A DNA stretch of 64,000 nt from Macrostomum lignano (GCA_002269645.1 NIVC01003413.1:1-64000), one strand, 5' to 3'; shown: positions 14,738 through 59,558, numbered from the stretch's first letter. Numbers and translations: made by a program. The notes: generated from the letters alone by a model not told the origin.

Positions 14738-14771
14738 CTAACCCTAACCCTAACCCTAACCCTAACCCTAA
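14738..14771. repeat. Interstitial telomere-like tract, unit 6
   Basis: About 5 CCCTAA copies. Confidence 0.85.
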
Positions 14772-16958: not shown

Positions 16959-16988
16959 CTAACCCTAACCCTAACCCTAACTCTAACC
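16959..16988. repeat. Interstitial telomere-like tract, unit 7
   Basis: ctaaccctaaccctaaccctaactctaacc. Confidence 0.85.
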
Positions 16989-18593: not shown

Positions 18594-21500
18594 CTCTTCC
18601 GAAGCGTTCTTGAGCTCTGCGTTCCCGCCGAACAGCGCCAGCATGTTGTCCTTGAAGTCCTCGGCAAAGATCGGCACGAAGCTGAGATTGCAGAAATCAG
18701 CTCGGCCCTTGCCAGCCGGGTAGTGCAGGTAGCTCGGCTCTGAGCTGTTGAGTCTCCAGCTGTTCCCGAACTCAAACAGCTGCCTCTCAGAGCTGCCAGC
18801 TGGCAGGACGCTGCCGTGTCTCAGTCTGAATCCGCTCGCATTGCTGTTGCCTAGCAACCCGTCCAGTCCGCTCGGGTATTTTCCTAACAAGTCCAGTTGA
18901 ACGCCGACTCTGAGCGAGCTAGTCTCCATGGTAACGGTGACGCTGACGCCGGTAGACTCGTCGACAATGTCGATGGTGCTGTTGTCGGGGACCTCCAGCC
19001 GGTAGCTGTCCAGTCTGGTCGCGTTGCTCAGCGCCGCCAGCTCGCCCCTGACGCTGCCGATCAGACGTCCGTCGCTGCTGAAGACGTCGAGGTCGTCGGA
19101 GCTTTCGTTGCGGATCACCGACACGGCCAGCTCGTTGAGGCCGGACTTCAGCGCGACGCCGACGAAGGCCGTGGCGGCTCCACCGCTGACTGGCGCGGTG
19201 CGCGCTTGCAGCCGCAGCATCGGTGAGTCCGGCCACCGCTCGCTGGTGAGCAGGTGGTACTCGCAGTGACCGTTGAATGTGTAGCTGCGGTTCGAGAGCG
19301 TGCTCAGATGGGGGTCGCCTCGGTTGAAGCCTGGAGATCGAGGTTGGTTGTTTGGTTTGGTGCTTAGTTGCTCAGGTTTTGGTTTTGGAGCTTATTTGCT
19401 TAGGTTTTGGTTCGATGCTTGGTTGCTTAGTTATTGGTTTACCTCCAGCAGGTGGCTGGTAGTCCTTGCTGGTGCACACGGGTCTTACGGCAGAATAAAC
19501 GGGCATCATTCCGGCCGCTGAGCAGACCCTTAAACCGTACAATTCATTTTTATACTGCTGAGATCCGAAACGAAATTGAACTCTATCAGTCGTCCTTTGC
19601 CGATAAAAGTACATTGCGTGTCCAGCACCGTCTGAGCTGCTGCTGATGAGGTGCCCAGCTGTAAATGATTATGTATTTTAACTCAATTAACTAAAACTAA
19701 ATATACGAGCGTATATTCAACTCTTCAATGCTCAGGTTCTGACTCACTGGTTGACATGCTGAACAGGATCCATTGCATGACAGTTCTCACAACCCAGAGG
19801 GGCTGACTTCTACGGCACAGCTGACTGATTTCGCTGCCAGCAGCTGCCGATGACATTTTGTAGCAGCACCTGGTCGACACCAGGTGACGGCAATTCTCAA
19901 GCTCGCATCTCAAGGAATTTTCCGGCTTACAACCGCTCGCACTGCTGCCTGTGAAGCTCCGAGCGCACTGGTAGCTGGTGTTACGGAAGCACATCCGGAT
20001 GCTGTCACCGGAGCACTCAAGCTTGTACGGACTGTACCGCCTGTCAAGGACTGCCGTGCGAAAATCGAAGGGACAGTCCGAGCAGCCTGGAAAGTCAGGG
20101 CTGCTCTTGTTGGCTCTGGCGGCTGCGATCCAACTGCCGCACTCAGGTGCACCCCTGTGCCCGATGCTGAGCTGCAGCACGTGACGCCCGGGTCTTCCCG
20201 AACTTCCGGGACTCAGGTTGGGCAGCTCGGGCCAGTCTGGGCTCAGGCTGAATGGCAGCCCTTTCCGAACGAATAAATTATCCGTGAATCCTGAGAATGC
20301 CATCAGGTTCAACGTTTGAGAGCTCCAGTTGAGGATTCTCGGCACAGGCAGGTGGAAGTCGCCGTAGTTGAAAATGGCGTATGAGTGAGTCTCGTTGCGT
20401 GTTACAACTGCTTGGAACTCGATGCTCTGAAATTGCATGCAGTAAGCAATTGTGCTCGAATGAGAAAGCATAAAAAAGCTGAAAAATGATTAAATCTAAC
20501 CTAGTGTTAGATTTCTGTGCAATTACATCGAGTAACCATAAAATCATAATAAGTTGCTTCGGGCGACCTTTTTTCTGTCTTTTATGGGATCTTCACGAAA
20601 TATATCAAATTCTAGTATGAGACGTCATAGCTTTTGCAAAGTATTAAAAAATGCATGCTAAAGAGTTGATTTTTTTCAGGAAAAATAACATTCTGGTTTT
20701 TCGTCTTCTTTTCCTTTTAAAGATACTTTAAATACAACATTGTTGTAAAAAGTGAAACTAAACTTAAAAAAACAGCTGCTTAGAGAATTTTGTTAAAAAT
20801 TACGTTATATATTTGCATCTTTGGGTCATTGCTAGCAAACAGAAGTGCAAATTATTTCCGTGGGAATGAGCTCCGTCAATTCGGAGAGATTTCCCCACTT
20901 ACAGCATTTGCCTTGGCTCGAGAACACAGGCCCAGGCAGAGGTCGAGCCAGCCGTTTTTCTCGTCCCAAGCTTGCCTAGAAGTGCAGTTCGAGACGCAGT
21001 CGAATCGGTTCCCATAAGGCAGTGACGGCGTCAGAATGCGCCAAGTCACGATGAGCGCCGTCAGAGGGTTGAACTTGGACCGAATCTCCTGCTCGATGAT
21101 CTGCTTGACCGCGCGCCAGTTCGAGCTAGAGCTATGGTTCCTCGAATTCAGCAGCTCGAAGGAAACCTTCGGAATCCAATCGCTTCCGTAGGTGGCAGGC
21201 TTAACGAACCAGTAAGGCGCAACGACGGCTCCAGGAAAGGTGACGTTGGCCGTGATGGAGTTGTATGGTAAATACCTCAGATACCCAGAGAAACTGATTG
21301 CGCCGTAGTTACTGATCTGGGTGTTGACATTTTTTTAAAATTATAAGCAGAGTTCAAAGAAAAATGAAGAAGTAGATTCTCCTTAATTTTGTCTTTCTAA
21401 GAATAGTTTTCTCCCAGCTCGTGAGCGCAACTGTCAATTCGAAGCTACAGTTCAACTATGTACGCAAAGTCATGTTGCGGAACTGGACTCACTTGAAAGG

Positions 21501-23006
21501 TCAAACTTTTCTGACTGCCAATCAGAAATGGAACGCCAAGTGGTGCGTGAATGATGTCATAGTCCGAGGTACTGGTTGCATTTACTGTCGATAGGAGCAT
21601 TTGAGCTGCAAAATGCATCCGGGATTGAGACAACTGGAGTGACTTCAGCCAAGTTATAATAACTGCAGCAGACTGTTGACACGTCAGTCAAAGTTTCATG
21701 CCCACAAACACTGACCCGAACTCAGTATGTGCTAGCCTAGCGCACATTAACTATGTGCTAGTTTATTTCTGTCTTATTGTTAAATGCTTTCTTTTTTAAC
21801 GAAAAAATATTTTTAGTGCCCACACAAATGGTTTTGCCACTATTGGAAGTTAAGATATGCATTAACCGTACCAAGCACTGACAATAAAAGTTTGACCTCT
21901 CGTTGCATCGTCAGATACAAATTCATCCGATTGGGACAGCATTCGCAGGCATCTCAGTCGAAGAGAATTTTTGTATCTGGGACATGGCCACAAGTGAATT
22001 AAATAAAAAGCTACTCAATCAAACGACATGTAGGAATAATGCATGCACTGCAGAGACTACTGACGAAATTGAGTTCGGTAGTGGATTTTCGCGCTGTTGC
22101 GAGCTGCAAGTTTTTTAATTAGCTTCTATGGCCACATAGGTGGTTAATGAGTGGCCCATCTGGTGTTTATACATGTATGATCTTTGGTACAAGCTTCAGC
22201 CATTCAGAACTTAAAAGGGACTACACCTTTTCACGTTCAATTTTGATCAAAGTCCAGTTCTAAAAAAACTAGCGGAAATTCAATTCAGACTGGGGATAAT
22301 TTTGTCTATGGCTAAACCTTGTTGCTTCGGTAGCAGAATGTTTTGAACTGGGGTTTGTTGCCCCAGTCTAAATTGAATTTCCGCAAGTTTTTTAGAACTG
22401 GACTTTGATCAAAATTGGACGTGAAAAGGTGTATTATTAAATTCAGACAGCCAATGAAATTCATGGGCTTCTAGATATATCCGGGGGAATATAAGCTGTA
22501 TATATCGGAGGGAATATCCCAATTTTTAGAAAGTCTTGGCCATAGACTCGCTTTAAGATGAGCGATCTTTTCTATTCCTTCATCCATGGTTCTACCTTGT
22601 AGTCAGTGAGTCTCTCTGTGATAAAAACCAATCCAAAAACCAAAGATGTCACATCAACTCACGATAGCAGACAGTCCCGTTGCCATAGTAACCCGGCTTG
22701 CAGATGCAATCAAATGAGCCGATCAGGTTGATGCAGTCGGCATTGGCATCGCACTTGGAGCTGCTGAGACACTCGTCAACGTCTTTATAATTTAGTTCAG
22801 TTTATGGCCAATAAAATACAGGCATAAATGTAGCTACAAGTATTCGCATTTTTAACAAGTGACCGAAATCAGAGGCTTTCACTTACCGGTGCAATTATCA
22901 GTTCCGTTGCCTTGAAACCCATCAAAGCAGGTGCAGTTGTACGACCCCGGCGTGTCGGTGCAAGTTGCGTAGAGACCGCAGGGCTTCGAATCGCATTTCT
23001 TCACGT
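18594..23006 (-). CDS. Module E (incomplete in window: ends after the VWD exon), 7 exons, 2,399 nt
   Basis: Exons: 22887-23006; 22663-22782; 21493-21605; 20903-21316; 19748-20426; 19443-19658; 18594-19330. The donor GTGAGC is intact at 18588-18593, and intron homology stops at about 18548. Confidence 0.8.
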
Positions 23007-26000
23007 CTGTAATGGTAGCAGCAGACACGCGTACGGAAATTATAACAAAATAAAGGAAAACAAGTAATCTATAGAATCTACAAAAAATTCCATCAGACCC
23101 ACACGAACACATATATTTTTTAATGTATATGGAAATGCTGTATGCTAGAATGTCTATAGATGCGATATCTACTGGTGTGGTAAATATATTTTCAGCTGCT
23201 GCCTTGACAGGCCCCGCCTTGAGGCAGATTTCAGCTAAGAGCTGTAAATTATATGTATGCTGTGTGTTATCCATAACATGGTGTCAGAGATGCAGTTAGA
23301 ACAGAACATGGTTCGTGTCAGACTGCTGCTGTTAGCAAATTTTACACGTAGTTGCACGGAGACAACAGCGAGGTGATGTTTGATTCGACTGGATTGCGAC
23401 CTCCAGGTCCCATGGTTTTCGACGACCTTTCACTCACTTTCATACAGTGAGAGCACATGGGCATACCATACTGAAGAGTGCTAAGACCTATCGTGAATGT
23501 GATTCAAGAAAGAGTGTTACATTCGAAGAGAAGCTGCATATCAATACTCATTTGGGTTCGCACATCCCTAGTAATGACATGCGACAGCCCTATATGACGC
23601 TCAGACGATTCATGGTCGTGTTGTTAAGCGTTAAACCGTGTTTTTGTTGTTGTTATCTGCTGCCTGAGCTGTGAGTACAACTGCATTCTCAAACTGTTGA
23701 GTATTTTACTATATGGAAAGGGGATGTTGCATGTATATGAATATGCTTTATGGAGAAGATACAGACGTAGCATAGAGTTGAGGGTGTAGTTCGGTCCTAG
23801 GAGTTTACGAAAAATACACTCTGCAAATCCAAATATACTAAATATTTGCTAAATTTCTCTTAAATTCCTGTGTTTGTGGCGATAAAATTACAACCAACAA
23901 ATTTATGCATAAAAAAGATAGGGGGATTTCTGAGGTGTAAGTACTTACCAACCGATAATCAGCTAAAGACAAAAATAATTTAGAATATAAATATTGGGGG
24001 TGTGAGAGTGAAGATCCCAACATTCTTCACCATATACCAGTTTTATCAAGGACAAAATCACTGCTCCATTCATTACTTCCTTCGTTTTATGTAGGGTAGG
24101 CCAAGTCAGAGCACAGGGTTTTACCTTCTGCCCCACACGGAACCTACGGAGAAGCAATGGTATGCAAATCGATCAATTGGCAAGAACAAATTGTCTGTCG
24201 CTGACATGTGCTCTGAAGTTGGAGTCCGCGCATTGGAGTCCGCATGTACAAACGGACCTCGGACATTCAAATCGGCAACTCATCGGCTTTTCTGGACTCC
24301 AAACTGCTACGCAATGTGAAAAAAAGACTCAGCAGACGAGTACGGTAGGCGTTAACTAAATTTTAACTTCCATAGCTGCTTTTTCATTATTAACAATTCA
24401 TTTTAGGTACGCCACATCGTGACTCCCTTATATTGTGACTGGAAAAAACTAAAGTGTTGTTGACTATGCATTGCCCTCGAATTCGTGTTTCTTCTTCATG
24501 CGTTTTTGGCTTTGAAAGTTTGTATCCTTTAAAAGAACATCGTGGGGATTTAACCTAGGATGCCTATGCGATGTCTATCGTAAATATACCTTTTCAAGCC
24601 CGAATGTGACAAAAGAAATCGAATGGCTATCTATCTGACCCAGACGAAAAAAGCATGCCGTACACAAGAATCTTAGAGACTGACCAATGAAGGCTCGTAA
24701 ACAGCTACAGAATTTTGCGACTTAAGAACTTACGGTTAAGCCGTTAAGACTAAGCGAATATAGCGGTGCCACATTTCGCTTACTTTACCACTTTTGGTTT
24801 TTGTATTTTGAAAGTACCACCTTCATGGAAGAAAGAATAGAATGGAGTGCTAATCTGAGCCAGTTATTTTTATCTCGTTCAATTTTCGCTTCTAACATCC
24901 CCTTCCCCCCGTTCTTTCCTATTGGCTCGTGACTGCCATAGACAAAGTATTTTTCGTCTCGTTTTTGTTTTCGTTCCCCTCTAAAAGGTATTTCCCAGCA
25001 TCGTACGAGCTCACAGCAAAATATGCTTTCAGCCAATAGGAAGGAACGGGGAAGGGATGTTAAAAGCGAAAATCGAGCGAGACAAAAATAACTGGCTCAG
25101 ATTAGCACTCCATTTTATTCCTCCCTCGATGACCACCTTACACAACTATTTTTAGATCTCTAAGCTCATATCCAAGCCATAGAAAAATTTGAAATTTGAA
25201 TTTGAAATTACTTTCGTCAAATTCGCGCCTGAAAAATATATACTGATAGCTAACGCCTTAAAGAGCCCCGAATTGTGAAAGAGATAAGCCAAGAGCTGCT
25301 AAATCTTTAACCCTGAGTAATAACTATAACGCAAACAAACATGAGACACTTAAGACACACACACACATCAGACCTACTAATAAGAATAATACGAGCTAAT
25401 AACTGATTACACCTGTCCAATGGGCAGATGTGCAACCGACAGCTCAGCCGCAGCTATTGCGCGACGCATCTGAAGGCTGCGCACGGCTGTTCAGTCCAAT
25501 GACTGGGGGGTCGCCACACCCACCCTCAATCACCCCAGCTAATTCTGGCACCCATTTTACAGCTAAGTGAACTGTAGCAATCCAGAGTTAAGCGTCTTGC
25601 TTAAGGACACAAATTGTTGCAGTGGGATCAGGAATCGAACATCCGACCTTCAAGTCGTGAATCCGACGCTCTAACCACTAGGCTACAACCCCTTTTGGCT
25701 ACAACCGCTTTTAGTAGGTGAGACCTACAAAAAACAAGTACACAAATGAGATCTAAGAGAACCCACATACAACCGAAAATAACACACGCATCAGACCCAC
25801 AAAAACACATACATAGGACACACAAGAACACAAATCAAACCCACAAGAAAACGAATCAGGCACACAAGAACACGAGAAAAATATATGAAAAATACTTTCA
25901 GGCTGCTGAACCTCACACAATTAAATACTTTACAGAACAGCTGCTCACCTTGCGGCTCCTGGCAGTCAGATGTCAGACAGGTTTTCACTGCCTGCTCGCA

Positions 26001-29000
26001 TTGGGGCCCTGTGAATCCCAGATCGCACTTGCACTCTTCACGGTGATAGTAAGCTGCAATTGTGACGGGTGAAGGGGTGAGTGAAAGAGTCAGTTAGTCA
26101 GTCAGTCAGTCAGTCAGTCAGTCAGTCGGTCAGTCATCCACTCACTCAAGTCAGTCAGTCAGTCAGTCAGTCACACTCACTCAAGTCAGTCAGTCAGTCA
26201 GTCAGTCAGTCAGTCAGTCAGTCAGTCACACTCACTCAAGTCAGTCAGTCAGCTACTCACCCGTGTCGTCAGCCATGCCGCAGTCAGGGCAGCAGCGGCC
26301 CCTGCTCCCGCAGTTGCACACCACAATCCTGGGAGTCCACACCGTGACGGCTCCGACCTCGTCCACCACCGCCAGCTGCAGTTTGATGTCGCCTCGCCAG
26401 TTGTCAACGGGCTGCCACACGAGCTGCCAGCTGCCGCTGGCTCCAGCCTCCAGCTTCGCGGTCCCCCCGACGGCCTCCAGCACGGTGACATTCGGTGAGG
26501 CGCCGTCGGGATCCGTCACGGAGAAGGTGACACTGACACTGTTGTTGCCGTTCACTCGCAGCTGGGCCGGGGCGCTCACGAACTGTGGTGGTCGGTTGGC
26601 CAGGACGACCCGGGTTCGAGTCTCGTCTCGAATAGCGACGGCCGCGTCTTGAGCGGCTGCGACCGAGCGAAGCTGAGCGGCGTCGAACATGCAGGTGAGG
26701 TAGGAGGAGCCGCGGCACACCTGCCATGGGAGAAGGCAGCCAGAGGGTCAGTACACAAATATAGCCTGTAATGCAACTTGTCAACTTCTAAATGAAGGAA
26801 TAAAATTTGTAACTCTTCCCTAATATTTTCATATTGGCTCGTCATAAATTCCACCTGTCCTTTCTACTCACCTCTTCCGAAGCGTTCTTGAGCTCCGCGT
26901 TCCCGCCGAACAGCGCCAGCATGTTGTCTTTAAAGTCCTCGGCAAAGGCCGGCACGAAGCTGAGATTGCAGAAGTCAGCTCGGCCCTTGCCAGCCGGGTA
27001 GTGCAGGTAGCTCGGCTCTGAGCTGTTGAGTCTCCAGCTGTTCCCGAACTCAAACAGCCGCCTCTCGGAGCTGCCAGCTGGCAAGACGCTGCCGTTTCTC
27101 AGTCTGAATCCGCTCGCATTGCTGTTGCCTAGCAACCCGTCCAGTCCGCTCGGGTATTTTCCTAACAAGTCCAGTTGAACGCCGACTCTGAGCGAGCTCG
27201 TCTCCATGGTAACGGTGACGCTGACGCCGGTAGACTCGTCGACAATGTCGATGGTGCTGTTGTCGGGGACCTCCAGCCGGTAGCTGTCCAGTCTGGTCGC
27301 GTTGCTCAGCGCCGCCAGCTCGCCCCTGACGCTGCCGATCCGACGTCCGTCGCTGCTGAAGACGTCGAGGTCGTCGGAGCTTTCGTTGCGGATCACCGAC
27401 ACGGCCAGCTCGTTGAGGCCGGACTTCAGCGCGACGCCGACGAAGGCCGTGGCGGCTCCACCGCTGACTGGCGCGGTGCGCGCTTGCAGCCGCAGCGTCG
27501 GTGAGTTCGGCCACCGCTCGCTGGTGAGCAGGTGGTACTCGCAGTGACCGTTGAATGTGTAGCTGCGGTTCGAGAGCGTGCTCAGGTGGGGGTCGCCTCG
27601 GTTGAAGCCTGGACATCGGAGGTGAATAAATAAATTAAGTACTCAAAATATGTGTGCTCAGAGCTAAAGTTACAGCAAATCAGTTACCTCCAACAGGTGG
27701 CTGGTAGTTCTTGCTGGTGCACACGGGTCTTACGGCAGAATAAGCGGCCATCATTCCGGCCGCTGAGCAGACTCTTAGGCCGTACAACTCATTTTGATAC
27801 TGGTGAGAGCCGAAGCCAAATCGAAAACTATCAGTCGTCCAATGCCGATAAAAGTACATTGCGTGTCTGGCGCCGTCTGAGCTGCTGCTAATGAGGTGAC
27901 CAGCTACAAATGATTATGTTTTTTTTAATTCAGTGGACTAACTCTTAATATTTATTGTACCATCAGCTTTGAGTTATTCAAACTTTTACGGTCAAGTTCT
28001 GACTCACTGGATGGCATGCTGAACATGATCCGTCGCAAGGCAGCTCTCACTTTCCAGAGGTCATCACTTCTACGGCACAGCTGACTGATTTCGCTGCCAG
28101 CTGCTGCCGATGACATTCTGTAGCAGCATGTGGTCGAAACCAGTTGGCTGCACCGTCGGAGCTGGCAGGCCCAAGAATTATAAGGTCTACATCTGCTCCC
28201 CATGTACCTGGACCTTTGTGCGCACTGGTAGCTGGTGTTGCGGAAACACATCCGGGTGCTGTCACCTGAGCACTCAAACTCGTACGGACTGTACCGCTTG
28301 TCAAGGACTGCCGTGCGAAGATCGAAGGGACAGTCGGAGCAGCCTGGAAATATAGAGCGGCTCTGGTTGGCTCTGGCGGCTGCGATCCAACTGCCGCACT
28401 CAGATAAAACCCTTTTCCCGATGCTCAGCACGTGGCGTCCGGGTCTTCCCGAACTTCCGGGACTCAGGTTGGGCAGCTCGGGCCAGTCTGGGCGCAGGCT
28501 GAATGGCAGCTCTTTCCGAACGAAAAAATTATCCGTAAATCCCGAGAATGCCATCAGGTTCAACTTTTGAGAGCTCCAGTTGAGGATTCTCGGCACAGGC
28601 AGGTGGAAGTCGCCGTAGTTGAAAATGGCGTATGAGTGAGTCTCGTTGCGCGTTACAACTGCTTGGAACTCGATGCTCTGAAATTGCATGCAGTAAGCAA
28701 TTGTGCTCGATTGAGAAAGAGCTGAAAAGCTTGATTTGCGGTCAGCTCTTCAAAGACGAAAAAAGTTTAAATTCGTTACTTGTTGCTTCGTTTTGACTGC
28801 TTTGCACGATAGCTTTCGTTTTAATTGCCAAATACTGCCCATTATGAGCGTTTAAGTTTGGGCTTCTAAGCAAGCAGTGTAAATTCGTGATGTTTTTTTT
28901 GGACTGCCTTGCGTGATAGTTTTATTAATGACCAAAGCATACCAATTTTTAGCACTTCCGGTGTTAGGCGTTACAAACTCTGCGTGCTTGCAGTCTCTGG

Positions 29001-47000: not shown

Positions 47001-50000
47001 GGAATTTAGTCTTGTACATGTTGAATTCCTGGCTTTGTCCCCCACCATAAAATCTATGGCGACGCCCCTGGGCTCATCCTGACTTCCACCCGTCATGGCT
47101 ACTCACCTCTTCCGAAGCGTTCTTGAGCTCCGCGTTCCCGCCGAAAAGCGCCAGCATGTTGTCTTTAAAGTCCTCGGCAAAGGCCGGCACGAAGCTGAGA
47201 TTGCAGAAGTCAGCTCGGCCCTTGCCAGCCGGGTAGTGCAGGTAGCTCGGCTCTGAGCTGTTGAGTCTCCAGCTGTTCCCGAACTCAAACAGCTGCCTCT
47301 CGGAGCTGCCAGCTTGCAGGACGCTGCCGTTTCTCAGTCTGAATCCGCTCGCGTTGCTGTTGCCTAGCAACCCGTTCAGTCCGCTCGGGTATTTTCCTGC
47401 CAAGTCCAGTTGAACGCCGATTCTAAGCGAGCTCGTCTCCATGGTAACGGTGACGCTGACGCCGACAGACTCGTCGAAAATCTCGATGCTGCTGTTGTCA
47501 GGGACTTCCAGCCGGTAGCTGTCCAGTCTGGTCGCGTTGCTCAGCGCCGCCAGCTCACCCCTGACGCTACCGATCCGACGTCCGTCGCTGCTGAAGACGT
47601 CGAGGTCGTCGGAGCTTTCGTTGCGGATCACCGACACGGCCAGATCGTTGAGGCCGGACTTCAGCGCGACGCCGACGAAGGCCGTGGCGGCTCCACCGCT
47701 GACTGGCGCGGTGCGCGCTTGCAGCCGCAGCGTCGGTGAGTTCGGCCACTGCTCGCTGGTGAGCAGGTGGTACTCGCAGTGACCGTTGAATGTGTAGCTG
47801 CGGTTCGAGAGCGTGCTCAGGTGAGGGTCGCCTCGGATGAAGCCTGGAGATCGGAGGTTGATTGTTTGGTTTAATTGCTTAGTTGCTCAGGTTTTGGTTT
47901 GATGCTTAGTTGCTCAGGTTTTGGTTTGATGCTTAGTTGCTCAGGATTTTGGTTTGATGCTTAGTTGCTCAGGTTTTGGTTTGATGCTTAGTTGCTCAGG
48001 TTTTGGTTTGATTCTGTAAGTGACCTAAAGCAGTTGAGCGGCCGGTAGCTGCCAAAAGTGAATAATTTTTCAAAATACTTAAAATATCGCAGTCAGAGCT
48101 ACAATTAAAGCGAAGCAGTTACCTCTAGCTGGTTGCTGGTAGTTCTTGCTGGTGCACATGGGTCTGACGGCATAATAAGCGGCCATCATTCCGGCCGCTG
48201 AGCAGACTCTTAGGCCGTACAACTCATTTTGATACTGCGGAGATCCGAAGCCAAATTGAAAACTATCAGTCCTGCTATGCCGATAGAAGTACATTGCGTG
48301 TCCTGCTTTGTCTGAGCTGGTGCTGATGAGTTGGCCAGCTGTAAATGATTGTGTTTTGCAAATCAATGAATTAAAACTTATTTATATCTTATTATCTGGT
48401 TCAGTTTATTCAACTCCTCAATCCTCAAGTTCTGACTCACTGGATGGCATGCTGAACATGATCCGTCGCATGACAGCTCTCACATTCCAGAGGGCATCAC
48501 TTCTACGGCACAGCTGACTGATTTCGCTGCCAGCAACTGCCGATGACATTCTGTAGCAGCATGTAATCCAAACCAGTCGGCTGCACATTTGGAGCCGGCA
48601 GGTCCAAGAAGAATGAGGCCGACAGCCACTGAACGCGCTGCAATGGCACGTTTGTGAGCACTGGTAGTTGGTTTTGCGGAAGCACATCCTGATGCTGTCA
48701 CCGGAGCACTCAAACTCGTACGGACTGTACCGCTTGTCAAGGACTGCCGTGCGAAGATCGAAGGGACAGTCGGAGCAGCCTGGAAAGACAGAGCTGCTTT
48801 GGTTGGCTCTCGCGGCTGCGATCCAACTGCCGCACTCAGATAAAACCCTCTTCCCGATGCTCAGCACGTGTCGTCCGGGTCTTCCCGAACTTCCAGGACT
48901 CAGGTTGGGCAGCTCGGGCCAGTCGGGGCGCAGGCTGAATGGCAGCTCTTTCCGAACGAATAAATTATCCATGAATCCTGAGAATGCCATCAGGTTCAAC
49001 GTTGGATGGCTCCAGTTGAGGATTCTCGGCACAGGCAGGTGGAAGTCGCCGTAGTTGAAAATGGCGTATGAGTGAGTCTCGTTGCGCGTTACAACTGCTT
49101 GGAACTCGATGCTCTGAAATTGCATGCAGTAAGCAATTGTGCTCGATTGAGAAAGAGCTGAAAAGCTTGATTTGCGGTCAGCTCTCCAAAGACGAAAAAA
49201 GTTTAAATCTGTTACTTGTTGCTTCGTTTAGACTGCTTTGCACGATAGCTTTCGTTTTAATTGCCAAAGACTGCCAATTCTGATCATTCAAGTTTGTGCC
49301 GTTAAGCAAGCAGTGTATATTCGTGATGTTTCTTTGTTCGCACTGCCTTGCGTGACAGTTTTATTAATTACCAAAACATGCTAATTCTTAGCACTCCCAT
49401 GCATAAGCAGAGCTTTACGAAAGAAATGCAGGCGTGACACGCTTCGCTTTAAGTTTTCCATGAAATAACTATTGAAGCCCTACAAGAAGCTAAATTTCTG
49501 AAATCTTATTAGTGACAGGAAATTCTAAAGGTGTACAGCTGTGCAAGAATATTTTGCGTCCATTGATACCAGTTTAGTAGTTGCGCTGCAAGAATCCTAG
49601 CAGATGCGCTACAAACTCTTAATGCCGTTTCAGCCTAAGCTACTAACTACGATATTTGGGGGGCCGTAGCCGAGCGGTAGCGCAGCTGCTCTGGTGTACC
49701 AGCGACCCAGGCTCGATTCCAAGTGCAGTCACATTAATTTGGGGCTGAATTGGAATCTCGGCTTGGCTCTGCTCGTGCAATTAACGGCCTTGAGAGACAA
49801 CCCCCAAGGCGCAGTGAAGTTTACATGCCTAACGATAGAATAAAGTTAGGGCCGCTGTACACTCCTGTGTGAGTGTGTGCCTGCGTACGTATCCGCGCGT
49901 TTTTATGCCTGCTCAAGGAAGTCGGCGGAATGGGCAGTAATGCCTCTCGCCGGTTGTGTGCCTATGTCGCTTAAAGTGCACCAGGGTGCACACAACCCCC

Positions 50001-52646
50001 TGCCTCTAATAAAAAAGAACTAAGATATTTTCTTGGTCATTGCCAGCAAACGGAAGTGCAAATTATTTCCGTGGGAATGAGCTCTGTCACTTCGGAGAGA
50101 TTTCCCCACTCACAGCATTTGCCTTGTCTCGAGAACACAGGCCCAGGCAGAGGTCGAGCCAGCCGTTTTTCTCGTCCCAAGCTTGCCTAGAAGTGCAGTT
50201 CGAGACGCAGTCGAATCGGTTCCCATAAGGCAGTGACGGCGTCAGAATGCGCCAAGTCACGATGAGCGCCGTCAGAGGGTTGAACTTGGACCGAATCTCC
50301 TGCTCTATGATCTGCTTGACCGCGCGCCAGTTCGAGCTAGAGCTATGGTTCCTCGAATTCAGCAGCTCGAAGGAAACCTTCGGAGTCCAATATCTCCGGT
50401 AGTAGTTGGTGGCAGGCTTAACGAACCAGTAAGGCGCCACGACGGCTCCAGTAAAGTTGATCTTCGCCGAGGTGGAGTTGTATGGTAAATGCCTCAGGCG
50501 ATAACCAGAGAAACTGATTGCTCCGTATTGGCTAACCTAGGGTGTTAAGATTTTTTTATTTAAAGCACACAGAAAAAGTTAAAGGACAATTAAAAAGTTG
50601 ATTTGAGCGAAATCTCCATCAGCTCAGTAGAAATAACTGTCAATTCGAAGTTACAGTTCAACTTTGTACGCAAAGCCAGATGTTGCAGAGCAGGACTCAC
50701 TCGAAAAGACAAACTTTCCTGACTGCCAATCAGAAAAGGAGCACCACGTGGTGCGGAAATGGAGCGTCTGTCGCCGTACCAGATACGGGTGTACGAACTC
50801 ATTCGGTAGTACCGGATACGGGTTGCATTTACTGTCGATAGGATCATGTGAGCTGAAAAATGCATCCGGGATTGAGAAAACTCGAGTGACTTTAGCCAAA
50901 TATAAATACAAATATATCACGTCAACTCACGATAACAGACAGTCCCGTTGCCATAGTAACCCGGCTTGCAAATGCAATCAAATGAACCGATCAGGTTGAT
51001 GCAGTCGGCATGAGCATCGCATTTGGAGCTGCTGAGACACTCGTCAACGTCTTTAATTGGGTTCAGTTTATGGCCGTTCAAATACAAGCTCAAGTTTAGT
51101 TATAAGTAGCCGCATTTATTTAAAAGTTAGTAAAATAGAAGGTAGAGTAGCTCGCTTAATAAATAGGAATAAAATGAATGAGAGAACAAACATTAACTCG
51201 TTTTTTTACTTTAATTCAATTGCCAATGCATTTCGACCCTCGTAGGTCATCGTCAGGGCAGTAGTGAAATTGAAAATTCTAATAAACAGTTGAATAAATA
51301 TACCTGTGATAAGTTGAATACACAATATAAATTATTGTACGTAGTTTTCAATCGAAACAAGTTAACACACGGTGCAGTAGCGTACACTCAAAGCTAAAAC
51401 ACGCTGAGTATGTCCCAGTATGTCTGCAACTTGAAGTCTCGTGTCCCTCGGCCTCTCAATGCAGGTGTCGTTTATAAATTTCATTGCTCTGGCGACCAGA
51501 GTATTTCGTACATCGGAAAAACTAAGCCACACTTGTACACTAGGGTCAAGGAGCACTGGACCAAAAGATCTGCTGTACAGGAGCATCTTCTCACATGCAA
51601 CTCATGCTGTAACAACAAACCGATTGATTTATTTAAGATTATCGATTCTTGCCGCCATGAGCACACTTTGAATATCTTAGAGGCTATGTACATCAAAGAT
51701 CAGAACCCGAGCCTAAACTGCCAGCTAGCTATGGGGGGGTGCCAGCCGCCAACTCAGCGTGTTTTAGCTTGGAGTGTACGCTACTGCACCGTGTGTTAAC
51801 TTGTTTCGATTGAAAACTACGTAATAATTTATATTGTGTATTCAACTTATCACAGGTATATTTATTCAACTGTTTATTAGAATTTTCAATTTCACTACTG
51901 CCCTGACGATAACCTACAAGGGTCGAAATGCATTGGCAATTGAATAAAAGTAAAAAAACGAGTTAATGTTTGTTCTCTAATTAAAGTCGAAGGTTTTCAC
52001 TTACCGGTGCAATTATCTGTTCCGTTGCCTTGAAACCCATCGATGCAGGTGCAGTTGTACGACCCCGGCGTGTCGGTGCAGGTAGCGTACAGACCGCAAG
52101 GCTTCGAATCGCATTTGCTCACGTCTGCAATGGTAGGTCGTTACAGCAGATACGGATAACGAAATAAAGGAAAACGGGTGATCAATGGAATCAACAAAAC
52201 ATCACATCAACCTCACACTAGCACACACATCAGATCCACAACAAAACACATACACATCGGAAAAACAAGAATACACACATAAGACCCGCAAGCTCAAAAC
52301 ACAGATTAAAATGCAACCACCAGAAACAATAACACGAGAGGAAAGTTTACGGCAATAAATTTCAGATTGTGTGAATCTACTGCAATCCGGTAATCTACTG
52401 CGCAACTGCTCACCTTGCGGCTCCTGGCAGTCAGATATCAGACAGACATTCACTGACTGCTCGCATTGGGGTCCTGTAAATCCCAGATCGCACTTGCACT
52501 CTTCACGGTGATAGTAAGCTGCAATGGTGACGAGTGGGTGCGTGAGTGAGTGAGTGAGTGAGTGAGTGAGTGAGTGAGTGAGTAAGTGAGTGAGTGAGTG
52601 AGTCAGTCAGTCAGTCAGTCAGTCACCCACTCACTCCAGTCAGTCA

Positions 52647-52689
<43 letters not shown>

Positions 52690-52691
52690 TA

Positions 52692-52730
<39 letters not shown>

Positions 52731-52980
52731 CCCACTCACTCAAATCAGTCAGTCAGTCAGTCAGTCAGTCAGTCAGTCAGTCAGTCATCCACTCACTCAA
52801 ATCAGTCAGTCAGTCACCCACTCACTCAAGTCAGTCAGTCAGTCAGTCAGTCAGTCAGTCAGTCAGTCACCAACTCACTCAAGTCAGTCAGTCAGTCAGT
52901 CAGTCAGTCAGTCAGTCAGTCAGTCACCAACTCACTCAAGTCAGTCAGTCAGTCACCCACTCACTCCAGTCAGTCAGTCA

Positions 52981-53023
<43 letters not shown>

Positions 53024-53025
53024 TA

Positions 53026-53068
<43 letters not shown>

Positions 53069-53520
53069 CCCACTCACTCAAATCAGTCAGTCAGTCAGTC
53101 AGTCAGTCAGTCAGTCAGTCAGTCATCCACTCACTCAAATCAGTCAGTCAGTCACCCACTCACTCAAGTCAGTCAGTCAGTCAGTCAGTCAGTCAGTCAG
53201 TCAGTCAGTCACCCACTCACTCAAATCAGTCAGTCAGTCACCCACTCACACAAATCAGTCAGTCAGTCACCCACTCACTCAAGTCAGTCAGTCAGTCAGT
53301 CAGTCAGTCAGTCAGTCAGTCAGTCAGTCAGTCAGTCAGTCAGTCAGTCAGTCAGTCAGTCAGTCAGTCAGTCAGTCAGTCAGTCAGTCAGTCAGTCACC
53401 CACTCACTCAAATCAGTCAGTCAGTCACCCACTCACTCAAGTCAGTCAGTCAGTCAGTCAGTCAGTCAGTCAGTCAGTCAGTCAGTCAGTCAGTCAGTCA
53501 GTCAGTCAGTCAGTCAGTCA

Positions 53521-53554
<34 letters not shown>

Positions 53555-56500
53555 AAGTCAGTCAGTCAGTCACCCACTCACTCAAATCAGTCAGTCAGTC
53601 AGTCAGTCAGTCAGTCAGTCAGTCAGTCAGTCAGTCAGTCACCCACTCACTCAAATCAGTCAGTCAGTCAGTCAGTCAGTCAGTCAGTCAGTCAGTCAGT
53701 CACCCACTCACTCAAATCAGTCAGTCAGTCAGTCACCCACTCACTCCAGTCAGTCAGTCAGTCAGTCAGTCAGTCAGTCAGTCAGTCAGTCAGTCAGTCA
53801 GTCAGTCAGTCAGTCAGTCACCCACTCACTCAAGTCAGTCAGTCAGTCAGTCAGTCAGTCAGTCAGTCAGCTACTCACCCGTGTCGTCAGCCATGCCGCA
53901 GTCAGGGCAGCAGCGGCCCCTGCTCCCGCAGTCGCACACCACAATCCTGGGAGTCCACACCGTGACGGCTCCGACCTCGTCCACCGCCGCCAGCTGCAGT
54001 TTGATGTCGCCTCGCCAGTTGTCGACGGGCTGCCACACGAGCTGCCAGCTGCCGCTGGCTCCAGCCTCCAGCTTCGCGGTCCCCCCGACGGCCTCCAGCA
54101 CGGTGACATTCGGTGAGGCACCGTCGGGATCCGTCACGGAGAAGGTGACACTGACACTGTTGTTGCCGCTCACTCGCAGCTGGCTCGGGGCGCTCACGAA
54201 CTGCGGTGGTCGGTTGGCCAGGACGACACGGGTTCGAGTCTCGTCTCGAATGGCGACGGCCGCGTCTTGAGCGGCTGCGACCGAGCGAAGCTGAGCGGCG
54301 TCGAACATGCAGGTGAGGTCGGAGGAGCCGGAGCTGCGGCACACCTGCCAGGGCGGAGCGGCAGCGGCATGGGTTTCCATGCGCAAAATGTTTTTCTCGA
54401 AATGCATAGTAGGTCTTTACTGGCAATTTTCTCACCAAGAATCCGGTAGTGACGTTAGCAACAACTTTTTAATTTTTTCGAGCTCGTACATTAAATAACT
54501 GATTACACCTGTTCTGATAAGCAGATGTGCAACCGACAGCTGCGCCGCAGCTATCGGGGGGAGCATCTGAAAGCTGCGTACGGCTGTTCAGTCAAAGTAC
54601 TGCGGGCTCACCAAACTCACCCTATACTATCGCAGCTAATGCTGATTGTCATTTTAGAGCAGGTTTAACTGAAGAAATGTAGAGTTAAGTGTCTTGTTCG
54701 AGGACACTAATGGTTCCAGTGAGATCGGGAATCCAACGGTCAACCTTCATGTCGAGAGCTACAACCCCTTATAGATTAATGAGTGGATCCAGGGTGGCCA
54801 ACCATTTTTTGATCAGGGGTACATCAGAAATTTATACCACAACGAGCGAGGTATCAGCGCAATTTTACCACCACAGGTCAACATTTTCATTTCGCTTGAA
54901 AATAGGATCATGACCGTATCTCAGGAAATTTTTCTCTTAAGTGTCCGATGACCCAATAAATTCACACCAGGACTCATGCATCGTAAAAATTTCTGCTTTT
55001 TCCCGAATACTGTAGTTCCACATTAGCACTTCTTAACTTCAACCTGCCTGTCCGCTCACCTCTTCCGAAGCGTTCTTGAGCTCCGCGTTCCCGCCGAACA
55101 GCGCCAGCATGTTGTCCTTGAAGTCCTCAGCAAAGGTCGGCACGAAGCTGAGATTGCAGAAATCAGCTCGGCCCTTGCCAGCCGGGTAGTGCAGATAGCT
55201 CGGCTCTGAGCTCTTGATTCTCCAGCTGTTCCCGAACTCAAACAGCTGCTTCTCGGAGCTGCCAGCTTTTAGGGCGCCACCGTATCCCAGTCTGAATCGG
55301 TATGCGTACCTGTTGCCTAGCAACCCGTCCAGTCCGCTCGCGCATTTTCCTGTCAAGTCCAGTTGAACGCCGACTCTGAGCGAGCTCGTCTCCATGGTAA
55401 CGGTAACGCTGACGCCGGCAGATTCGTCGACAATGTCGATAGTGCTGTTGTCAGGGACCTCCAGCCGGTAGCTGTCCAGTCTGGTCGCGTTGCTCAGCGC
55501 CGCCAGCTCGCCCCTGACGCTGCCGATCCGACGTCCGTCGCTGCTGAAGACGTCGAGGTCGTCGGAGCTTTCGTTGCGGATCACCGACACGGCCAGCTCG
55601 TTGAGGCCGGACTTCAGCGCGACGCCGACGAAGGCCGTGGCGCCTCCACCGCTGACTGGCGCGGTGCGCGCTTGCAGCTGCACCCTCGGTAAGCGCCAGC
55701 AAAATATGTTGTAGAGCAGGTGGTACTCGCAATGACCGTTGAATGTGTAGCTGCGGTTCGAGAGCGTGCTCAGGTGAGGGTCGCCTCGGATGAAGCCTGG
55801 ATATCGGACGTTGGTGTTTGGTTTGATGCTTATAAGTGACCTAAAGTATTTGAGCTTTAATTACTTTATGAAATACTCAAAATATGGGTGCTTAGAGCTA
55901 CAGTTACAGCAAATCAGTTACCTCCAACAGGTGGCTGGTAGTTCTTGCTGGTGCACACGGGTCTTACGGCAGAATAAGCGGCCATCATTCCGGCCGCTGA
56001 GCAGACTCTTAGGCCGTACAACTCATTTTGATACTGCTGAGACCGGAGGCCAAATCGAACTCGATCAGTCGTCATTTGCCGATAAAAGTAAATTGCGTGT
56101 CCGGCGCCGTCTGAGCTGCTGCTGATGAGGTGACCAGCTACAAATGATTGTTTTTTTTAATTCAGTGGACTAACACTTGGTAAATATTTTACCGTATTTT
56201 ACATTTTACATTTATATTTAAATACATTTTACCATGTTATTCAAACTTTCACGGTCAAGTTGTGACTCACTGGATGACATGTTGAACATGATCTGTCGCA
56301 TGGCAGCTCTCACTTTCCAGACGGCATCACTTCTACGGCACAGCTGACTGATTTCGCTGCCAGCAGCTGCCAACGACATTCTGTAGCAGCAACTGGTCGA
56401 CACCAGCTGACTGCACTTTTGAAGCCGGCAGGCCAAGGAATAAGAAGGTCTACATCTGCTGTACCTGAACCTTTGTGCGCACAGGTAGCTGGTGTTGCGA

Positions 56501-58732: not shown

Positions 58733-59086
58733 CTGCAATGGTAGGTCGTTGCAGCAGATACGGATAACGAAATAAAGGAAAACGGGTGATCGATGGAATC
58801 AACAAAACATCACATCAATCTCACACTAGCACACACATTAGATATACAACAACACACACATCGGAAAAACAAGAATACACACATAAGACCAGTAGGAACA
58901 CACATCTGATCCACAAAAACACACAAAAGGCCTACCAGAATACAAACATTATAGAGCCAGTTGAAAACACAGAAACAAATTAAAAAGCAACCATTAGACA
59001 CAATAACACGAGGGAAAGTTTAAGACAATAAATTTCAGATTGTGTGAATCTACTGCAATCCGGTAATCTACTACGCAACTGCTCAC

Positions 59087-59135
59087 CTTGCGGCTCCTGA
59101 CAGTCAGTTGTCAGAAAGACTTTCACTGACTGCTC
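59087..59135 (-). pseudogene. Truncated 3' half of the module-terminal EGF exon (edge of the module array)
   Basis: EQSVKVFLTTDCQEPQ plus intact GTGAGC donor. The 5' half (YYHREECKCDLGFTGPQC) is missing, one Cys is changed to Phe, and an in-frame TGA lies just upstream. Confidence 0.75.
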
Positions 59136-59558
59136 CTTCACTCACTGACTGAAATCTTCTATCTTCTGTCTTTTACATTCTTATACCCCGACTGCTGACT
59201 AAATCAAACTCACTTTTCTGGGACTGAGCTGTCTAATGGTTAGTGACTTTCGTTAGTGAGCCACGAGTGACTTTGATCATTATCTACCAATGAAACCGTA
59301 CACATAATATTATTGTCACATGATTTCGTAGTAAAAGTGTGTTGAATAATCTGTCATTGTGTCATGCTGTACGCTCATTATTCAACGCTTAGGAATCATT
59401 ATTTAAGGCTTCTAAAAATACATTCATGAGACAATGGGTTTGTGTATATGGTTTTGTCATAGACAATGATAAATTTTAGTCACTCCTTTTTTCGCCACTC
59501 GTAAAAATTTTATTATTGTCTACCTCCAAAACTATATAGACAATCTATTATTATCAAA

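What the first reader, a model, noticed from the sequence alone, without database searches (positions are those of the whole stretch)
19308..55788. RGDPH in all five modules: an autocleavage site fused to an integrin-type RGD
Seen: F(N/I)RGDPHLSTL at 19308-19322, 27586-27600, 35514-35528, 47821-47835 and 55774-55788, invariant even where neighbouring loops diverge. Established: GDPH at the start of VWD domains is cleaved autocatalytically at Asp-Pro in MUC4, MUC2, MUC5AC and FCGBP; the Asp anhydride formed can cross-link; RGD is the canonical integrin ligand. Inference: the precursor could self-process into ~1,000-aa subunits (VWD-Cad-EGFx3-NIDO-AMOP), each ending in ...RGD, coupling cleavage to exposure, destruction or covalent attachment of an adhesion motif.
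Basis: partly seen in the sequence, partly recalled or inferred. Interest (0 to 1): 0.75.

Follow-up and report, generated by a model that had tools for sequence, protein, structure and literature searches.

The report
Flatworm mucin-4-like repeats, shared cleavage motif
Five recently duplicated copies of a flatworm MUC4-like adhesion/mucin gene unit each carry the family's usual GDPH self-cleavage site, and the arginine that turns it into "RGD" is most likely an incidental substitution inherited by the copies rather than an integrin-binding signal.

Summary
The motif is real. RGDPH, within PGF(N/I)RGDPHLSTLSNRSYTFNGHCEYHLL, occurs five times at exactly the stated coordinates, but on the minus strand.

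The window is Macrostomum lignano (flatworm) DNA. It holds a tandem array of five 4.4–11 kb units. A full unit has 9 exons: EGF-EGF-NIDO-(Cys-rich region in the AMOP position)-VWD-Ig/cadherin-like-EGF. All exons and splice sites are intact, and the units join in phase into a 4,811-codon open frame.

The invariance carries no signal. The VWD exons are 92–98% identical in DNA with low synonymous divergence (dS 0.08, against 0.18–0.25 in five of the other exons). RGDPH sits in one of eight invariant runs of 9 or more residues.

GDPH is the family-typical Asp-Pro cleavage site at the β1–β2 turn of VWD, so cleavage is plausible but untested.

Arg before GDPH occurs at 11 of 188 homologous sites (5.9%), in at least six unrelated lineages; F, W, S and Y are usual. 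A second RGD in the Ig-like exon is RDD in one unit.

In solved cleaved VWD domains the Asp stays engaged in the fold and strand β1 stays in the sheet. Cleavage therefore nicks the chain rather than releasing subunits.

Whether the units form one precursor is likely for U1–U4 but unproven. Verdict: an ordinary new member of a known kind.

The parts
55774..55788 (-). RGDPH of unit U1 (context GFIRGDPHLSTL)
   Evidence: Minus-strand translation.
47821..47835 (-). RGDPH of unit U2 (GFIRGDPHLSTL)
35514..35528 (-). RGDPH of unit U3 (GFNRGDPHLSTL)
27586..27600 (-). RGDPH of unit U4 (GFNRGDPHLSTL)
19308..19322 (-). RGDPH of unit U5 (GFNRGDPHLSTL)
52414..58732 (-). Unit U1, 9 exons: EGFa 58732-58613, EGFb 58510-58391, NIDO 58312-58194 and 57927-57505, NIDO/Cys-rich 56934-56271, Cys-rich (AMOP position) 56137-55922, VWD 55796-55060, Ig/cadherin-like 54344-53879, EGFc 52518-52414
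   Evidence: Exon mapping with conserved AG/GT sites; 2970 nt, no stops, phase 1 at both ends.
41015..52124 (-). Unit U2, same 9 exons; VWD 47843-47107, Ig-like 43432-42967, EGFc 41119-41015. The VWD-to-Ig-like intron is 3.7 kb and contains repeated DNA.
   Evidence: 3012 nt, no stops.
33524..38699 (-). Unit U3; VWD 35536-34800, Ig-like 34361-33896, EGFc 33628-33524
   Evidence: 3054 nt, no stops.
25949..33171 (-). Unit U4, the reference unit of 999 codons; VWD 27608-26872, Ig-like 26720-26261, EGFc 26053-25949
18594..23006 (-). Unit U5, 7 exons ending with VWD 19330-18594. No Ig-like or EGFc exon follows; repeat-rich DNA begins at about 18.5 kb. U5 corresponds to the public model A0A1I8J495 (P0006).
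23007..23112 (-). Only in U5: an ATG-initiated, signal-peptide-like extension in frame with EGFa (MCSCGSDGIFCRFYRLLVFLYFVIISVRVSA/ATIT)
   Evidence: U1-U4 have a stop and no Met in the homologous stretch.
52125..52413 (-). U1-to-U2 junction: a 289-nt GT...AG interval, phase 1 to phase 1. The 352-nt interval 33172-33523 is the same for U3-to-U4.
   Evidence: Its start is homologous to the intron that precedes the terminal exon in paralogs, but the acceptor (cttcag) reads ctcgtg here and no tail exon follows.
59087..59135 (-). Partial EGFc remnant marking the 5' edge of the array
   Evidence: blastn match to EGFc positions 57-105.
54006..54014 (-). Second RGD (NWRGDIKLQL) in the Ig/cadherin-like exon of U1. 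Also at 43094-43102 (U2) and 26388-26396 (U4); RDD at 34023-34031 (U3).
   Evidence: The paralogs P0001 and P0002 have QGD.

Best explanation
The window carries a tandem array of five recently duplicated units of a Macrostomum lignano gene family descended from a MUC4-type (NIDO-AMOP-VWD) cell-surface mucin.

Each unit's VWD domain begins with the GDPH tetrapeptide conserved in this family. In the folded domain GDPH forms the tight turn between β-strands 1 and 2. It is the place where the Asp side chain attacks the Asp-Pro bond, through a cyclic anhydride, during passage through the secretory pathway. Cleavage here is inferred, not shown.

By analogy with solved cleaved VWD domains, the result would be a nick. 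Strand β1 (AGGFNR) stays in the sheet and the new Asp C-terminus stays hydrogen-bonded to the motif's own His and to neighbouring backbone. Cleavage would therefore mature and stabilise the domain rather than release free ~1,000-residue subunits.

The Arg that creates 'RGD' is a lineage-specific substitution at a variable position that is usually F, W, S or Y. It is identical in the five units because the VWD exon is almost identical in DNA, through recent duplication and/or gene conversion. It is most likely not an integrin ligand.

Units U1-U4 are probably spliced together, EGFc to the next EGFa, in phase, into one multi-unit protein. U5 may start a transcript of its own.
For: - Organism and family. 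The top hits are M. lignano proteins, and P0006 is the public model of U5 (compared by eye). Pfam finds EGF_3/EGF_CA, NIDO (34.8 bits against 25) and VWD (30.9 against 22.9).
- MUC4-type relative. A 46%-identical homolog from another sample (L002) reads Ser/Thr/Pro-rich mucin repeats, EGFx3, NIDO, VWD (GFNRGDPH), Ig-like, EGF, transmembrane segment.
- Position of the motif. The AlphaFold2 model of P0006 (mean pLDDT 78) puts residues 471-476 (AGGFNR) in a strand, GDP in a turn and HLS in the next strand. Foldseek matches VWD domains, including cleaved FCGBP D10 (8qci) and RGMB.
- Chemistry. Asp and His are required; the Gly-Asp bond is cis; the termini make many hydrogen bonds; β1 is lost only on denaturation and reduction (PMC10880436). 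All FCGBP GDPH sites are cleaved in the ER, with the anhydride hydrolysed and predicted buried (PMC8267560).
- Invariance explained. VWD exon dS is 0.08 and dN 0.046, against dS 0.18-0.25 in EGFa, EGFb, NIDO1, the two Cys-rich exons and EGFc. 203 of 246 columns are invariant, and the motif DNA is near-identical.
- Arg is rare and scattered: 11 of 188 sites, in at least six groups whose nearest relatives have W, F, T or N.
- The second RGD is not conserved: RDD in U3, QGD in paralogs.
- Multi-unit reading. All units are intact, with in-frame indels, phase 1-1 ends and conserved splice sites, giving 4,811 codons without a stop. U1-U4 lack any in-frame Met before EGFa. The terminal-exon acceptor present in paralogs is lost in U1-U4. 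The paralog P0001 really encodes two NIDO-containing units in one gene.
Against: - No cleavage data exist for any flatworm member.
- pLDDT is below 50 exactly at residues 474-478 (FNRGD), so local geometry and exposure are not reliably modelled. I could not compute solvent accessibility because no coordinates were available.
- In RGMB complexes the cleaved Asp is reported to be solvent-exposed (PMC10880436), so burial is not universal.
- Arg is retained across 46% sequence identity in L002/P0125 and in all M. lignano paralogs seen. Some lineage-level constraint on Arg, structural or otherwise, cannot be excluded.
- No start, signal peptide or terminal exon for a U1-U4 gene was found in the window.
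- Public gene models split the region (P0005-P0007).
- Reading through the EGFc donor gives a hydrophobic tail and a stop, so single-unit products remain possible.
Confidence: 0.75

Rival explanations
1. The Arg is selected, and RGD-PH couples Asp-Pro autocleavage to exposure, destruction or covalent attachment of an integrin-binding RGD at the new C-terminus of each ~1,000-residue subunit.
For: - RGD is present in all five units, in all M. lignano paralogs seen and in a 46%-identical homolog.
- RGD sits at a β-hairpin turn, which is a loop position in principle.
- The cleaved Asp is solvent-exposed in RGMB (PMC10880436).
- SUSD2, a relative, has been reported to associate with integrin β1, though not through its own RGD (PMC12951126).
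Against: - Arg occurs at position -1 in only 5.9% of GDPH sites and arose several times independently.
- Conservation within the window is explained by near-identical DNA.
- The Asp carboxylate needed for integrin metal coordination is the cleavage nucleophile. [quoted passage not shown]
- The turn is only 2-3 residues long, and β1 is part of the sheet.
- From memory (Pierschbacher and Ruoslahti 1984, not checked here), Pro after RGD abolishes activity in peptides.
- The other RGD in the same protein drifts to RDD or QGD.
- No paper in the library links a fused RGDPH to integrins.
Confidence: 0.06
2. The five units are separate single-unit genes, or partly dead copies, rather than modules of one precursor. 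Each would make a ~1,000-residue protein like the paralog P0004 (signal peptide ... EGFc, hydrophobic GPI-like tail).
For: - Single-unit paralogs exist with a signal peptide and a C-terminal hydrophobic tail (P0004, P0003).
- The related transcript L002 is single-unit with a transmembrane segment.
- U5 has its own ATG and a signal-peptide-like extension.
- 2.8 kb of unique DNA separates U4 from U5.
- Read-through after EGFc gives a hydrophobic tail and a stop.
- Public models split the region.
Against: - U1-U4 have a stop and no Met upstream of EGFa.
- The U1-to-U2 and U3-to-U4 spacers are 289 and 352 nt with canonical GT...AG and matching phase.
- The paralogs' terminal-exon acceptor is lost in U1-U4.
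- All exons remain intact, with dN/dS below 1 in every exon and only in-frame indels. That is unexpected for units that cannot be translated on their own.
- The hydrophobic read-through ORFs lie in TG-rich DNA, which yields such peptides in several frames.
Confidence: 0.3
3. GDPH in these units is retained as a structural turn only and is not cleaved, or is cleaved only by a host protease, so no self-processing occurs.
For: - Cleavage of Muc4 and SUSD2, the closest AMOP-VWD relatives, has been reported to be serine-protease dependent, and in vitro translated SUSD2 was not cleaved at neutral pH (PMC6696261).
- The flatworm VWD has an unusual Cys in NGHCEY where relatives have Gly.
Against: - The Asp, Pro, His and downstream Asn (in place of FCGBP Gln4094) that support autocleavage are all present.
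- Most data favour autocatalysis across GDPH proteins (PMC8267560).
- The SUSD2 evidence has been questioned as a folding artefact (PMC10880436).
Confidence: 0.15

Closest known systems
MUC4 / 'mucin-like protein' family (NIDO-AMOP-VWD-EGF-TM; GDPH cleavage into α and β subunits)
   Same: Domain order NIDO, Cys-rich region, VWD with GDPH at its start, then EGF. A close flatworm homolog (L002) also has the Ser/Thr/Pro mucin region and a transmembrane segment. The junction ...RP..C..Y.PP....GDPH..T....(Y/F).FNG is shared.
   Different: The window units have no mucin repeat or transmembrane segment. The AMOP Pfam model is not detected. An Ig/cadherin-like domain follows VWD. The units are repeated five times in tandem. 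Arg, rather than an aromatic residue, precedes GDPH.
FCGBP (13 VWD domains, 11 with GDPH, all cleaved)
   Same: Many GDPH-bearing VWD domains possibly in one polypeptide, giving nicking at every repeat. The VWD fold matches 8qci, 8rde and 8r0t.
   Different: FCGBP repeats are VWD-C8-TIL-E assemblies, and its fragments are held by an intradomain disulfide from a Cys five residues before the cleaved Asp (PMC8267560). The flatworm units lack C8/TIL and have no Cys in that position; the nearest is 16 residues upstream.
SUSD2 (AMOP-VWD-Sushi) and the 7,101-residue protein P0124 with ten AMOP-VWD-Sushi-like repeats
   Same: GDPH at the AMOP/VWD junction. P0124 shows that multi-unit concatenation of such modules, each with a GDPH, occurs elsewhere.
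   Different: P0124 has W, A or F before GDPH. It shows no NIDO and has a different domain downstream. Its source organism is unknown (ENA contig).
Repulsive guidance molecules (RGMa/b/c)
   Same: Proteins that carry both an RGD and a GDPH-cleaved partial VWD domain (PMC4395201 and PMC8902710 listed; structures 4bq8, 4ui2 and 6z3m matched).
   Different: In RGMs the RGD and the GDPH are separate motifs (my own knowledge, not checked here), not fused as RGDPH. RGMs have no NIDO or EGF and are not repeated.

Membership tests
VWD domain (Pfam PF00094) | Significant match to the VWD profile, and the VWD β-sandwich fold | tested here: met
   30.9 bits against a cut-off of 22.9. phmmer hits FCGBP, MUC5AC and VWF chains. 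Foldseek probability is 1.0 to MUC2, MUC5AC, VWF, FCGBP and RGMB VWD domains.
GDPH-cleaving VWD domains | Gly-Asp-Pro-His at the turn between β1 and β2, with Asp and His intact | tested here: met
   GDPH is present in all five units. The model places it between strands 471-476 and 480-482. The requirement comes from PMC10880436.
GDPH-cleaving VWD domains | Polar residue 14 positions after the Asp that hydrogen-bonds it (Gln4094 in FCGBP D10) | tested here: inconclusive
   Asn occupies that position (TFNG), and F491/N492 are nearly invariant in alignment A1. The equivalence to Gln4094 rests on counting residues, not on a structural superposition.
GDPH-cleaving VWD domains | Actual scission of the Asp-Pro bond | not testable with these tools
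   Needs protein expression or proteomics.
MUC4 / SUSD2-type (NIDO-AMOP-VWD) proteins | NIDO domain upstream of VWD | tested here: met
   Pfam NIDO scores 34.8 bits against a cut-off of 25, residues 130-357 of the unit.
MUC4 / SUSD2-type (NIDO-AMOP-VWD) proteins | AMOP domain (PF03782) between NIDO and VWD | tested here: not met
   There is no PF03782 hit even at E<=10, for the unit or for P0125. Only the last ~20 residues before GDPH align to AMOP-bearing homologs. A Cys-rich region (CSDCP...CCY...) occupies the AMOP position.
MUC4 / SUSD2-type (NIDO-AMOP-VWD) proteins | Ser/Thr/Pro mucin region and a membrane anchor | tested here: not met
   Neither was found in the window units. Both are present in the related transcript L002, and a GPI-like hydrophobic tail is present in paralogs P0001, P0003 and P0004.
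RGD integrin ligands | Arg-Gly-Asp tripeptide | tested here: met
RGD integrin ligands | Motif conserved among homologs beyond what the neighbouring constraint explains | tested here: not met
   G and D are fixed by GDPH. Arg at -1 occurs at 11 of 188 sites, in at least six unrelated groups.
RGD integrin ligands | Presentation on an exposed, flexible loop with a free Asp carboxylate | tested here: inconclusive
   The model shows a tight 3-residue turn and Arg as the last residue of β1, but pLDDT is below 50 at 474-478. In FCGBP D10 the Asp is engaged; in RGMB it is exposed.
RGD integrin ligands | Binding to an integrin | not testable with these tools
   Needs a binding or adhesion assay.
FCGBP-like multi-VWD self-nicking proteins | Several GDPH-VWD domains in one polypeptide | tested here: inconclusive
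   The 4,811-codon in-phase ORF, the missing starts in U1-U4 and the lost tail-exon acceptor favour it. No transcript evidence was available.
FCGBP-like multi-VWD self-nicking proteins | VWD-C8-TIL-E assembly | tested here: not met
   No C8 or TIL hits.

The most novel reading that the evidence does not exclude
The array encodes a giant protein of more than 4,800 residues that nicks itself at every VWD. The resulting ...RGD C-termini would be cryptic integrin (or other receptor) ligands, unmasked only when strand β1 is pulled out of the sheet by force or acid. That would be a mechanically or pH-gated adhesion switch in a flatworm surface or secreted glycoprotein.
Probability: 0.04. Interest if true: 0.7.

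Novelty: new member of a known kind. Interest (0 to 1): 0.25.

Why it matters
The evidence instead points to an ordinary GDPH site of a MUC4-like family, with an incidental Arg.

Two things remain of modest interest:
- M. lignano has expanded this family into tandem, in-phase units that may be translated as a multi-unit, repeatedly nicked protein. This parallels FCGBP and the ten-unit protein P0124, and the exon phases (1-1 cassettes) make the mechanism of such expansion plain.
- The current public gene models of the locus are fragmentary or chimeric.

Tried and rejected
- Plus-strand reading of the stated coordinates gives no motif.
- The word-indexed homolog search with the AMOP-to-Ig-like region found almost only M. 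lignano paralogs. The exhaustive HMMER search was needed instead.
- My regex for 'AMOP context' was too strict and excluded all Arg cases, so I use the unfiltered count.
- tblastn with the N- and C-terminal exons of paralogs P0001, P0003 and P0004 found no first or terminal exon in the window.
- Pfam on ten other ORFs of the window gave only a gag-type aspartyl protease fragment and a sub-threshold CARME hit.
- The literature search for 'RGDP' with integrin gave nothing relevant. The search for Macrostomum with AMOP/NIDO found no paper on this family.
- A neighbour-joining tree timed out and was replaced by nearest-neighbour identities.
- Solvent accessibility of the RGD could not be computed because model coordinates are not exposed.
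- I considered reading the Ser/Leu/Phe-rich ORFs at 1-18.5 kb as a mucin domain and rejected it. All three frames are open there, which I take to reflect low-complexity repeats (composition not measured); the DNA is a composite tandem repeat.

Full report
**Observation**

On the + strand the stated coordinates translate to unrelated peptide. On the minus strand each of them reads RGDPH exactly, within PGF(N/I)RGDPHLSTLSNRSYTFNGHCEYHLL. These are the only five GDPH in any of the six frames.

**What the locus is**

- The sequence is eukaryotic with short introns...ttgcag|exon|gtaagt..., and EGF exons in phase 1-1.
- I assembled one unit from nine exons. It is 2,997 nt, exactly 999 codons, in phase 1 at both ends.
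- Pfam finds EGF_3/EGF_CA, NIDO (34.8 bits) and VWD (30.9 bits), plus sub-threshold Big_9/Cadherin_5 hits after the VWD. The AMOP model is not detected, even at E<=10.
- The best database hits are Macrostomum lignano proteins at 73-89% identity. P0006 (A0A1I8J495) is the public model of the last unit. P0007 is a chimeric model that joins exons of two units.
- More distant relatives are 'mucin-like protein'/MUC4 of Anneissia and Branchiostoma, and SUSD2-like of a sea urchin.
- A 46%-identical homolog assembled from run SRR30276804 (L002) has an ORF open to its 5' end. It reads Ser/Thr/Pro-rich mucin repeats, three EGF, NIDO, VWD (GFNRGDPH), Ig-like, EGFs and a transmembrane segment. This is the MUC4 plan, so the family descends from a MUC4-type surface mucin.

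**The array**

- Self-comparison shows tandem units between 18.5 and 59.1 kb, with introns also alignable.
- All nine exons (seven in the last unit) were found in five units, U1-U5, each with a conserved AG and GT.
- The coding lengths are 2,970, 3,012, 3,054 and 2,997 nt, plus 2,399 nt for the truncated U5. None has a stop and all indels are in frame.
- Joined in order, the units give 14,432 nt, 4,811 codons, with no stop.
- U5 ends with its VWD exon at 18594. Below about 18.5 kb lies a different, composite repeat.

**Is the invariance meaningful?**

No.
- The VWD exons are 92-98% identical to U4 in DNA, and the Ig-like exons about 97%.
- Mean pairwise dS is 0.08 (VWD), 0.05 (Ig-like) and 0.08 (NIDO2), against 0.18-0.25 in EGFa, EGFb, NIDO1, the two Cys-rich exons and EGFc. 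The VWD part has therefore been duplicated or homogenised most recently.
- 203 of 246 VWD columns are invariant, and RGDPH lies in a 25-residue invariant run, one of eight runs of 9 or more.
- The motif's DNA differs only by two synonymous changes and the Asn/Ile change.

**Is Arg before GDPH usual?**

An exhaustive HMMER search with the VWD exon gave 493 hits.
- In the 154 proteins examined (146 newly returned hits of the 150 best, plus eight homologs fetched earlier) there are 188 GDPH sites. The preceding residue is F 45, W 41, S 32, Y 17, R 11 (5.9%) and L 9, with others rarer.
- The Arg cases are Lingula, the bivalve Potamilus, the gastropod Batillaria, an unnamed ENA protein and the flatworm pair.
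- By nearest-neighbour identity they fall into at least six groups, whose closest relatives carry W, F, T or N. Arg has therefore arisen repeatedly.
- The Anneissia and Branchiostoma homologs have F-GDPH, A-GDPH, RWDPH or RYDPH. Fish mucin-4 has lost the site (GGLH).
- Within Macrostomum, Arg is kept in all paralogs and in the 46%-identical homolog. This shows lineage-level retention, not a general feature.
- As an internal control, a second RGD (NWRGDIKLQL) in the Ig-like exon is RDD in U3 and QGD in the paralogs P0001 and P0002.

**Structure**

- An AlphaFold2 model of P0006, built with a 50-sequence alignment (A1), has mean pLDDT 78.
- It places AGGFNR (471-476) in a β-strand, GDP in a turn and HLS in the next strand. 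pLDDT is below 50 at 474-478.
- Foldseek matches the VWD domains of MUC2, MUC5AC, VWF, FCGBP D10 (8qci) and RGMB. Sequence search of the PDB agrees.
- The FCGBP D10 crystal structure paper (PMC10880436) reports several relevant points:
  - GDPH lies between the first two strands.
  - D-to-A/N and H-to-N mutations block cleavage.
  - The Gly-Asp bond is cis.
  - The peptide carrying β1 is lost only after denaturation and reduction.
  - Cleavage stabilises the domain.
- PMC8267560 shows that all FCGBP GDPH sites are cleaved in the ER. The anhydride was found hydrolysed, no cross-link was detected, and the new C-terminus is predicted to point inward.
- In RGMB, however, the Asp is solvent-exposed.
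- By analogy, the flatworm site would nick each VWD without releasing free subunits, and its Asp would be poorly placed to coordinate an integrin metal ion. From memory (not checked here), Pro after RGD is non-permissive in peptides.

**Autocatalysis caveat**

For Muc4 and SUSD2, the closest AMOP-VWD relatives, serine-protease-dependent cleavage has been reported, and in vitro translated SUSD2 was not cleaved (PMC6696261). The later FCGBP work questions that interpretation.

**One precursor or five genes?**

The single-unit paralog P0004 has three relevant features:
- a first exon (signal peptide plus half an EGF) ending in phase 1;
- the same EGFc donor in phase 1;
- a terminal exon about 100 nt downstream that encodes an acidic spacer and a hydrophobic tail.

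P0001 has its terminal exon 82 nt after EGFc. It truly contains two NIDO-bearing units in one gene, the first lacking VWD in the genome.

In the window:
- The first ~70 nt after EGFc are homologous to the P0001 intron in U1-U4. The acceptor (cttcag) reads ctcgtg, and no tail exon follows.
- The U1-to-U2 and U3-to-U4 spacers are only 289 and 352 nt, with GT...AG and matching phase.
- U1-U4 have a stop and no Met upstream of EGFa, whereas U5 has an in-frame ATG and a signal-peptide-like stretch.
- The U2-to-U3 spacer (2.3 kb) contains a gag-protease fragment.
- The U4-to-U5 spacer contains 2.8 kb of unique DNA.

This favours U1-U4 as one multi-unit ORF, with U5 possibly independent. Against it:
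- Read-through of the EGFc donor gives hydrophobic tails and stops, though in TG-rich DNA that does so in several frames.
- No 5' or 3' end of such a gene was found in the window.
- No transcript data were available.

Multi-unit relatives do exist elsewhere. P0124 (7,101 residues) has ten AMOP-VWD-Sushi-like repeats, each with GDPH.

**Verdict**

The motif is the ordinary GDPH site of a MUC4-like VWD, copied five times by recent tandem duplication. The Arg is most likely incidental. Cleavage is plausible but untested and would nick rather than liberate subunits. The multi-unit precursor is plausible for U1-U4. I found no literature on a functional fused RGDPH. Interest is low to moderate, and the finding is a new member of a known kind.

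Noticed in passing
window 1-18540: A different, composite tandem-repeat block (units of about 2.2-5.7 kb at 75-97% identity, with internal 30-172-bp arrays). Long Ser/Leu/Phe-rich ORFs are open in all three minus-strand frames, which looks like low-complexity repeat DNA rather than coding sequence. It starts within about 60 nt of the end of the U5 VWD exon, so U5 has no Ig-like or EGFc exon in the window.
   Followed up: partly
window 54006-54014, 43094-43102, 26388-26396 (RGD); 34023-34031 (RDD), minus strand: A second RGD (NWRGDIKLQL) sits in the Ig/cadherin-like exon of U1, U2 and U4. It is RDD in U3 and QGD in paralogs P0001 and P0002, which shows how readily RGD comes and goes in this protein.
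   Followed up: yes
window 23007-23112, minus strand: Only U5 has an ATG-initiated, signal-peptide-like extension in frame with its first EGF exon (MCSCGSDGIFCRFYRLLVFLYFVIISVRVSA/A). The homologous stretch of U1-U4 is interrupted by a stop and has no Met. U5 may be a separate gene.
   Followed up: partly
window 39569-40204 (+): An ORF with a gag-type aspartyl protease domain (Asp_protease_2, E=1e-5). It is a retroelement fragment inside the 2.3-kb U2-to-U3 spacer.
   Followed up: partly
window 30151-30608 and 46193-46629: An 89%-identical repeat is shared by an intron of U4 and the enlarged VWD-to-Ig-like intron of U2. The ORFs on both strands at 44-46.7 kb have no Pfam hit. These are probably insertions of a mobile element.
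   Followed up: no
window about 55690-55650 and about 55330-55250, minus strand (U1 VWD exon): The U1 VWD has two divergent patches: YNIFCWRLPRVQ for TSERWPNSPTLR just after the invariant run, and GKCASGL...NRYAYRFRLGYGGALK for GKYPSGL...NSNASGFRLRNGSVLP. A similar first patch occurs in the public protein P0005, which is not encoded in this window. A further U1-like copy therefore exists elsewhere, as an allele, a homeolog or upstream.
   Followed up: no
VWD exons of all units, e.g. window 27608-26872, minus strand: Flatworm-specific cysteines. NGHCEY appears where relatives have NGxGEY, and DFCNLSF where relatives have no Cys. This may be a lineage-specific disulfide inside the fragment C-terminal to the cleavage site. 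No Cys lies within 15 residues upstream of GDPH, unlike FCGBP.
   Followed up: no
public models P0005, P0006, P0007 (A0A1I8J4A5, J495, J499): The existing gene models of this locus are fragmentary or chimeric. P0007 starts at an intronic ATG and joins U1 Cys-rich exons to U2 EGFa and then to U2 VWD. P0006 ends by reading through the VWD donor.
   Followed up: partly
window 59087-59135 (-) and 59664-60128 (+): A half EGFc remnant marks the 5' edge of the array. Beyond it the sequence is unrelated. A + strand ORF there has a sub-threshold match to carnosine N-methyltransferase (17.9 bits against a cut-off of 27).
   Followed up: no
L003 (NIVC01000862.1) 20666-25976 and 48586-62159: The P0001 locus holds another full single unit upstream, plus a gene with two NIDO-bearing units of which the first lacks VWD, Ig-like and EGFc exons. 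The family is being rearranged by exon-cassette (phase 1-1) duplication and loss.
   Followed up: partly
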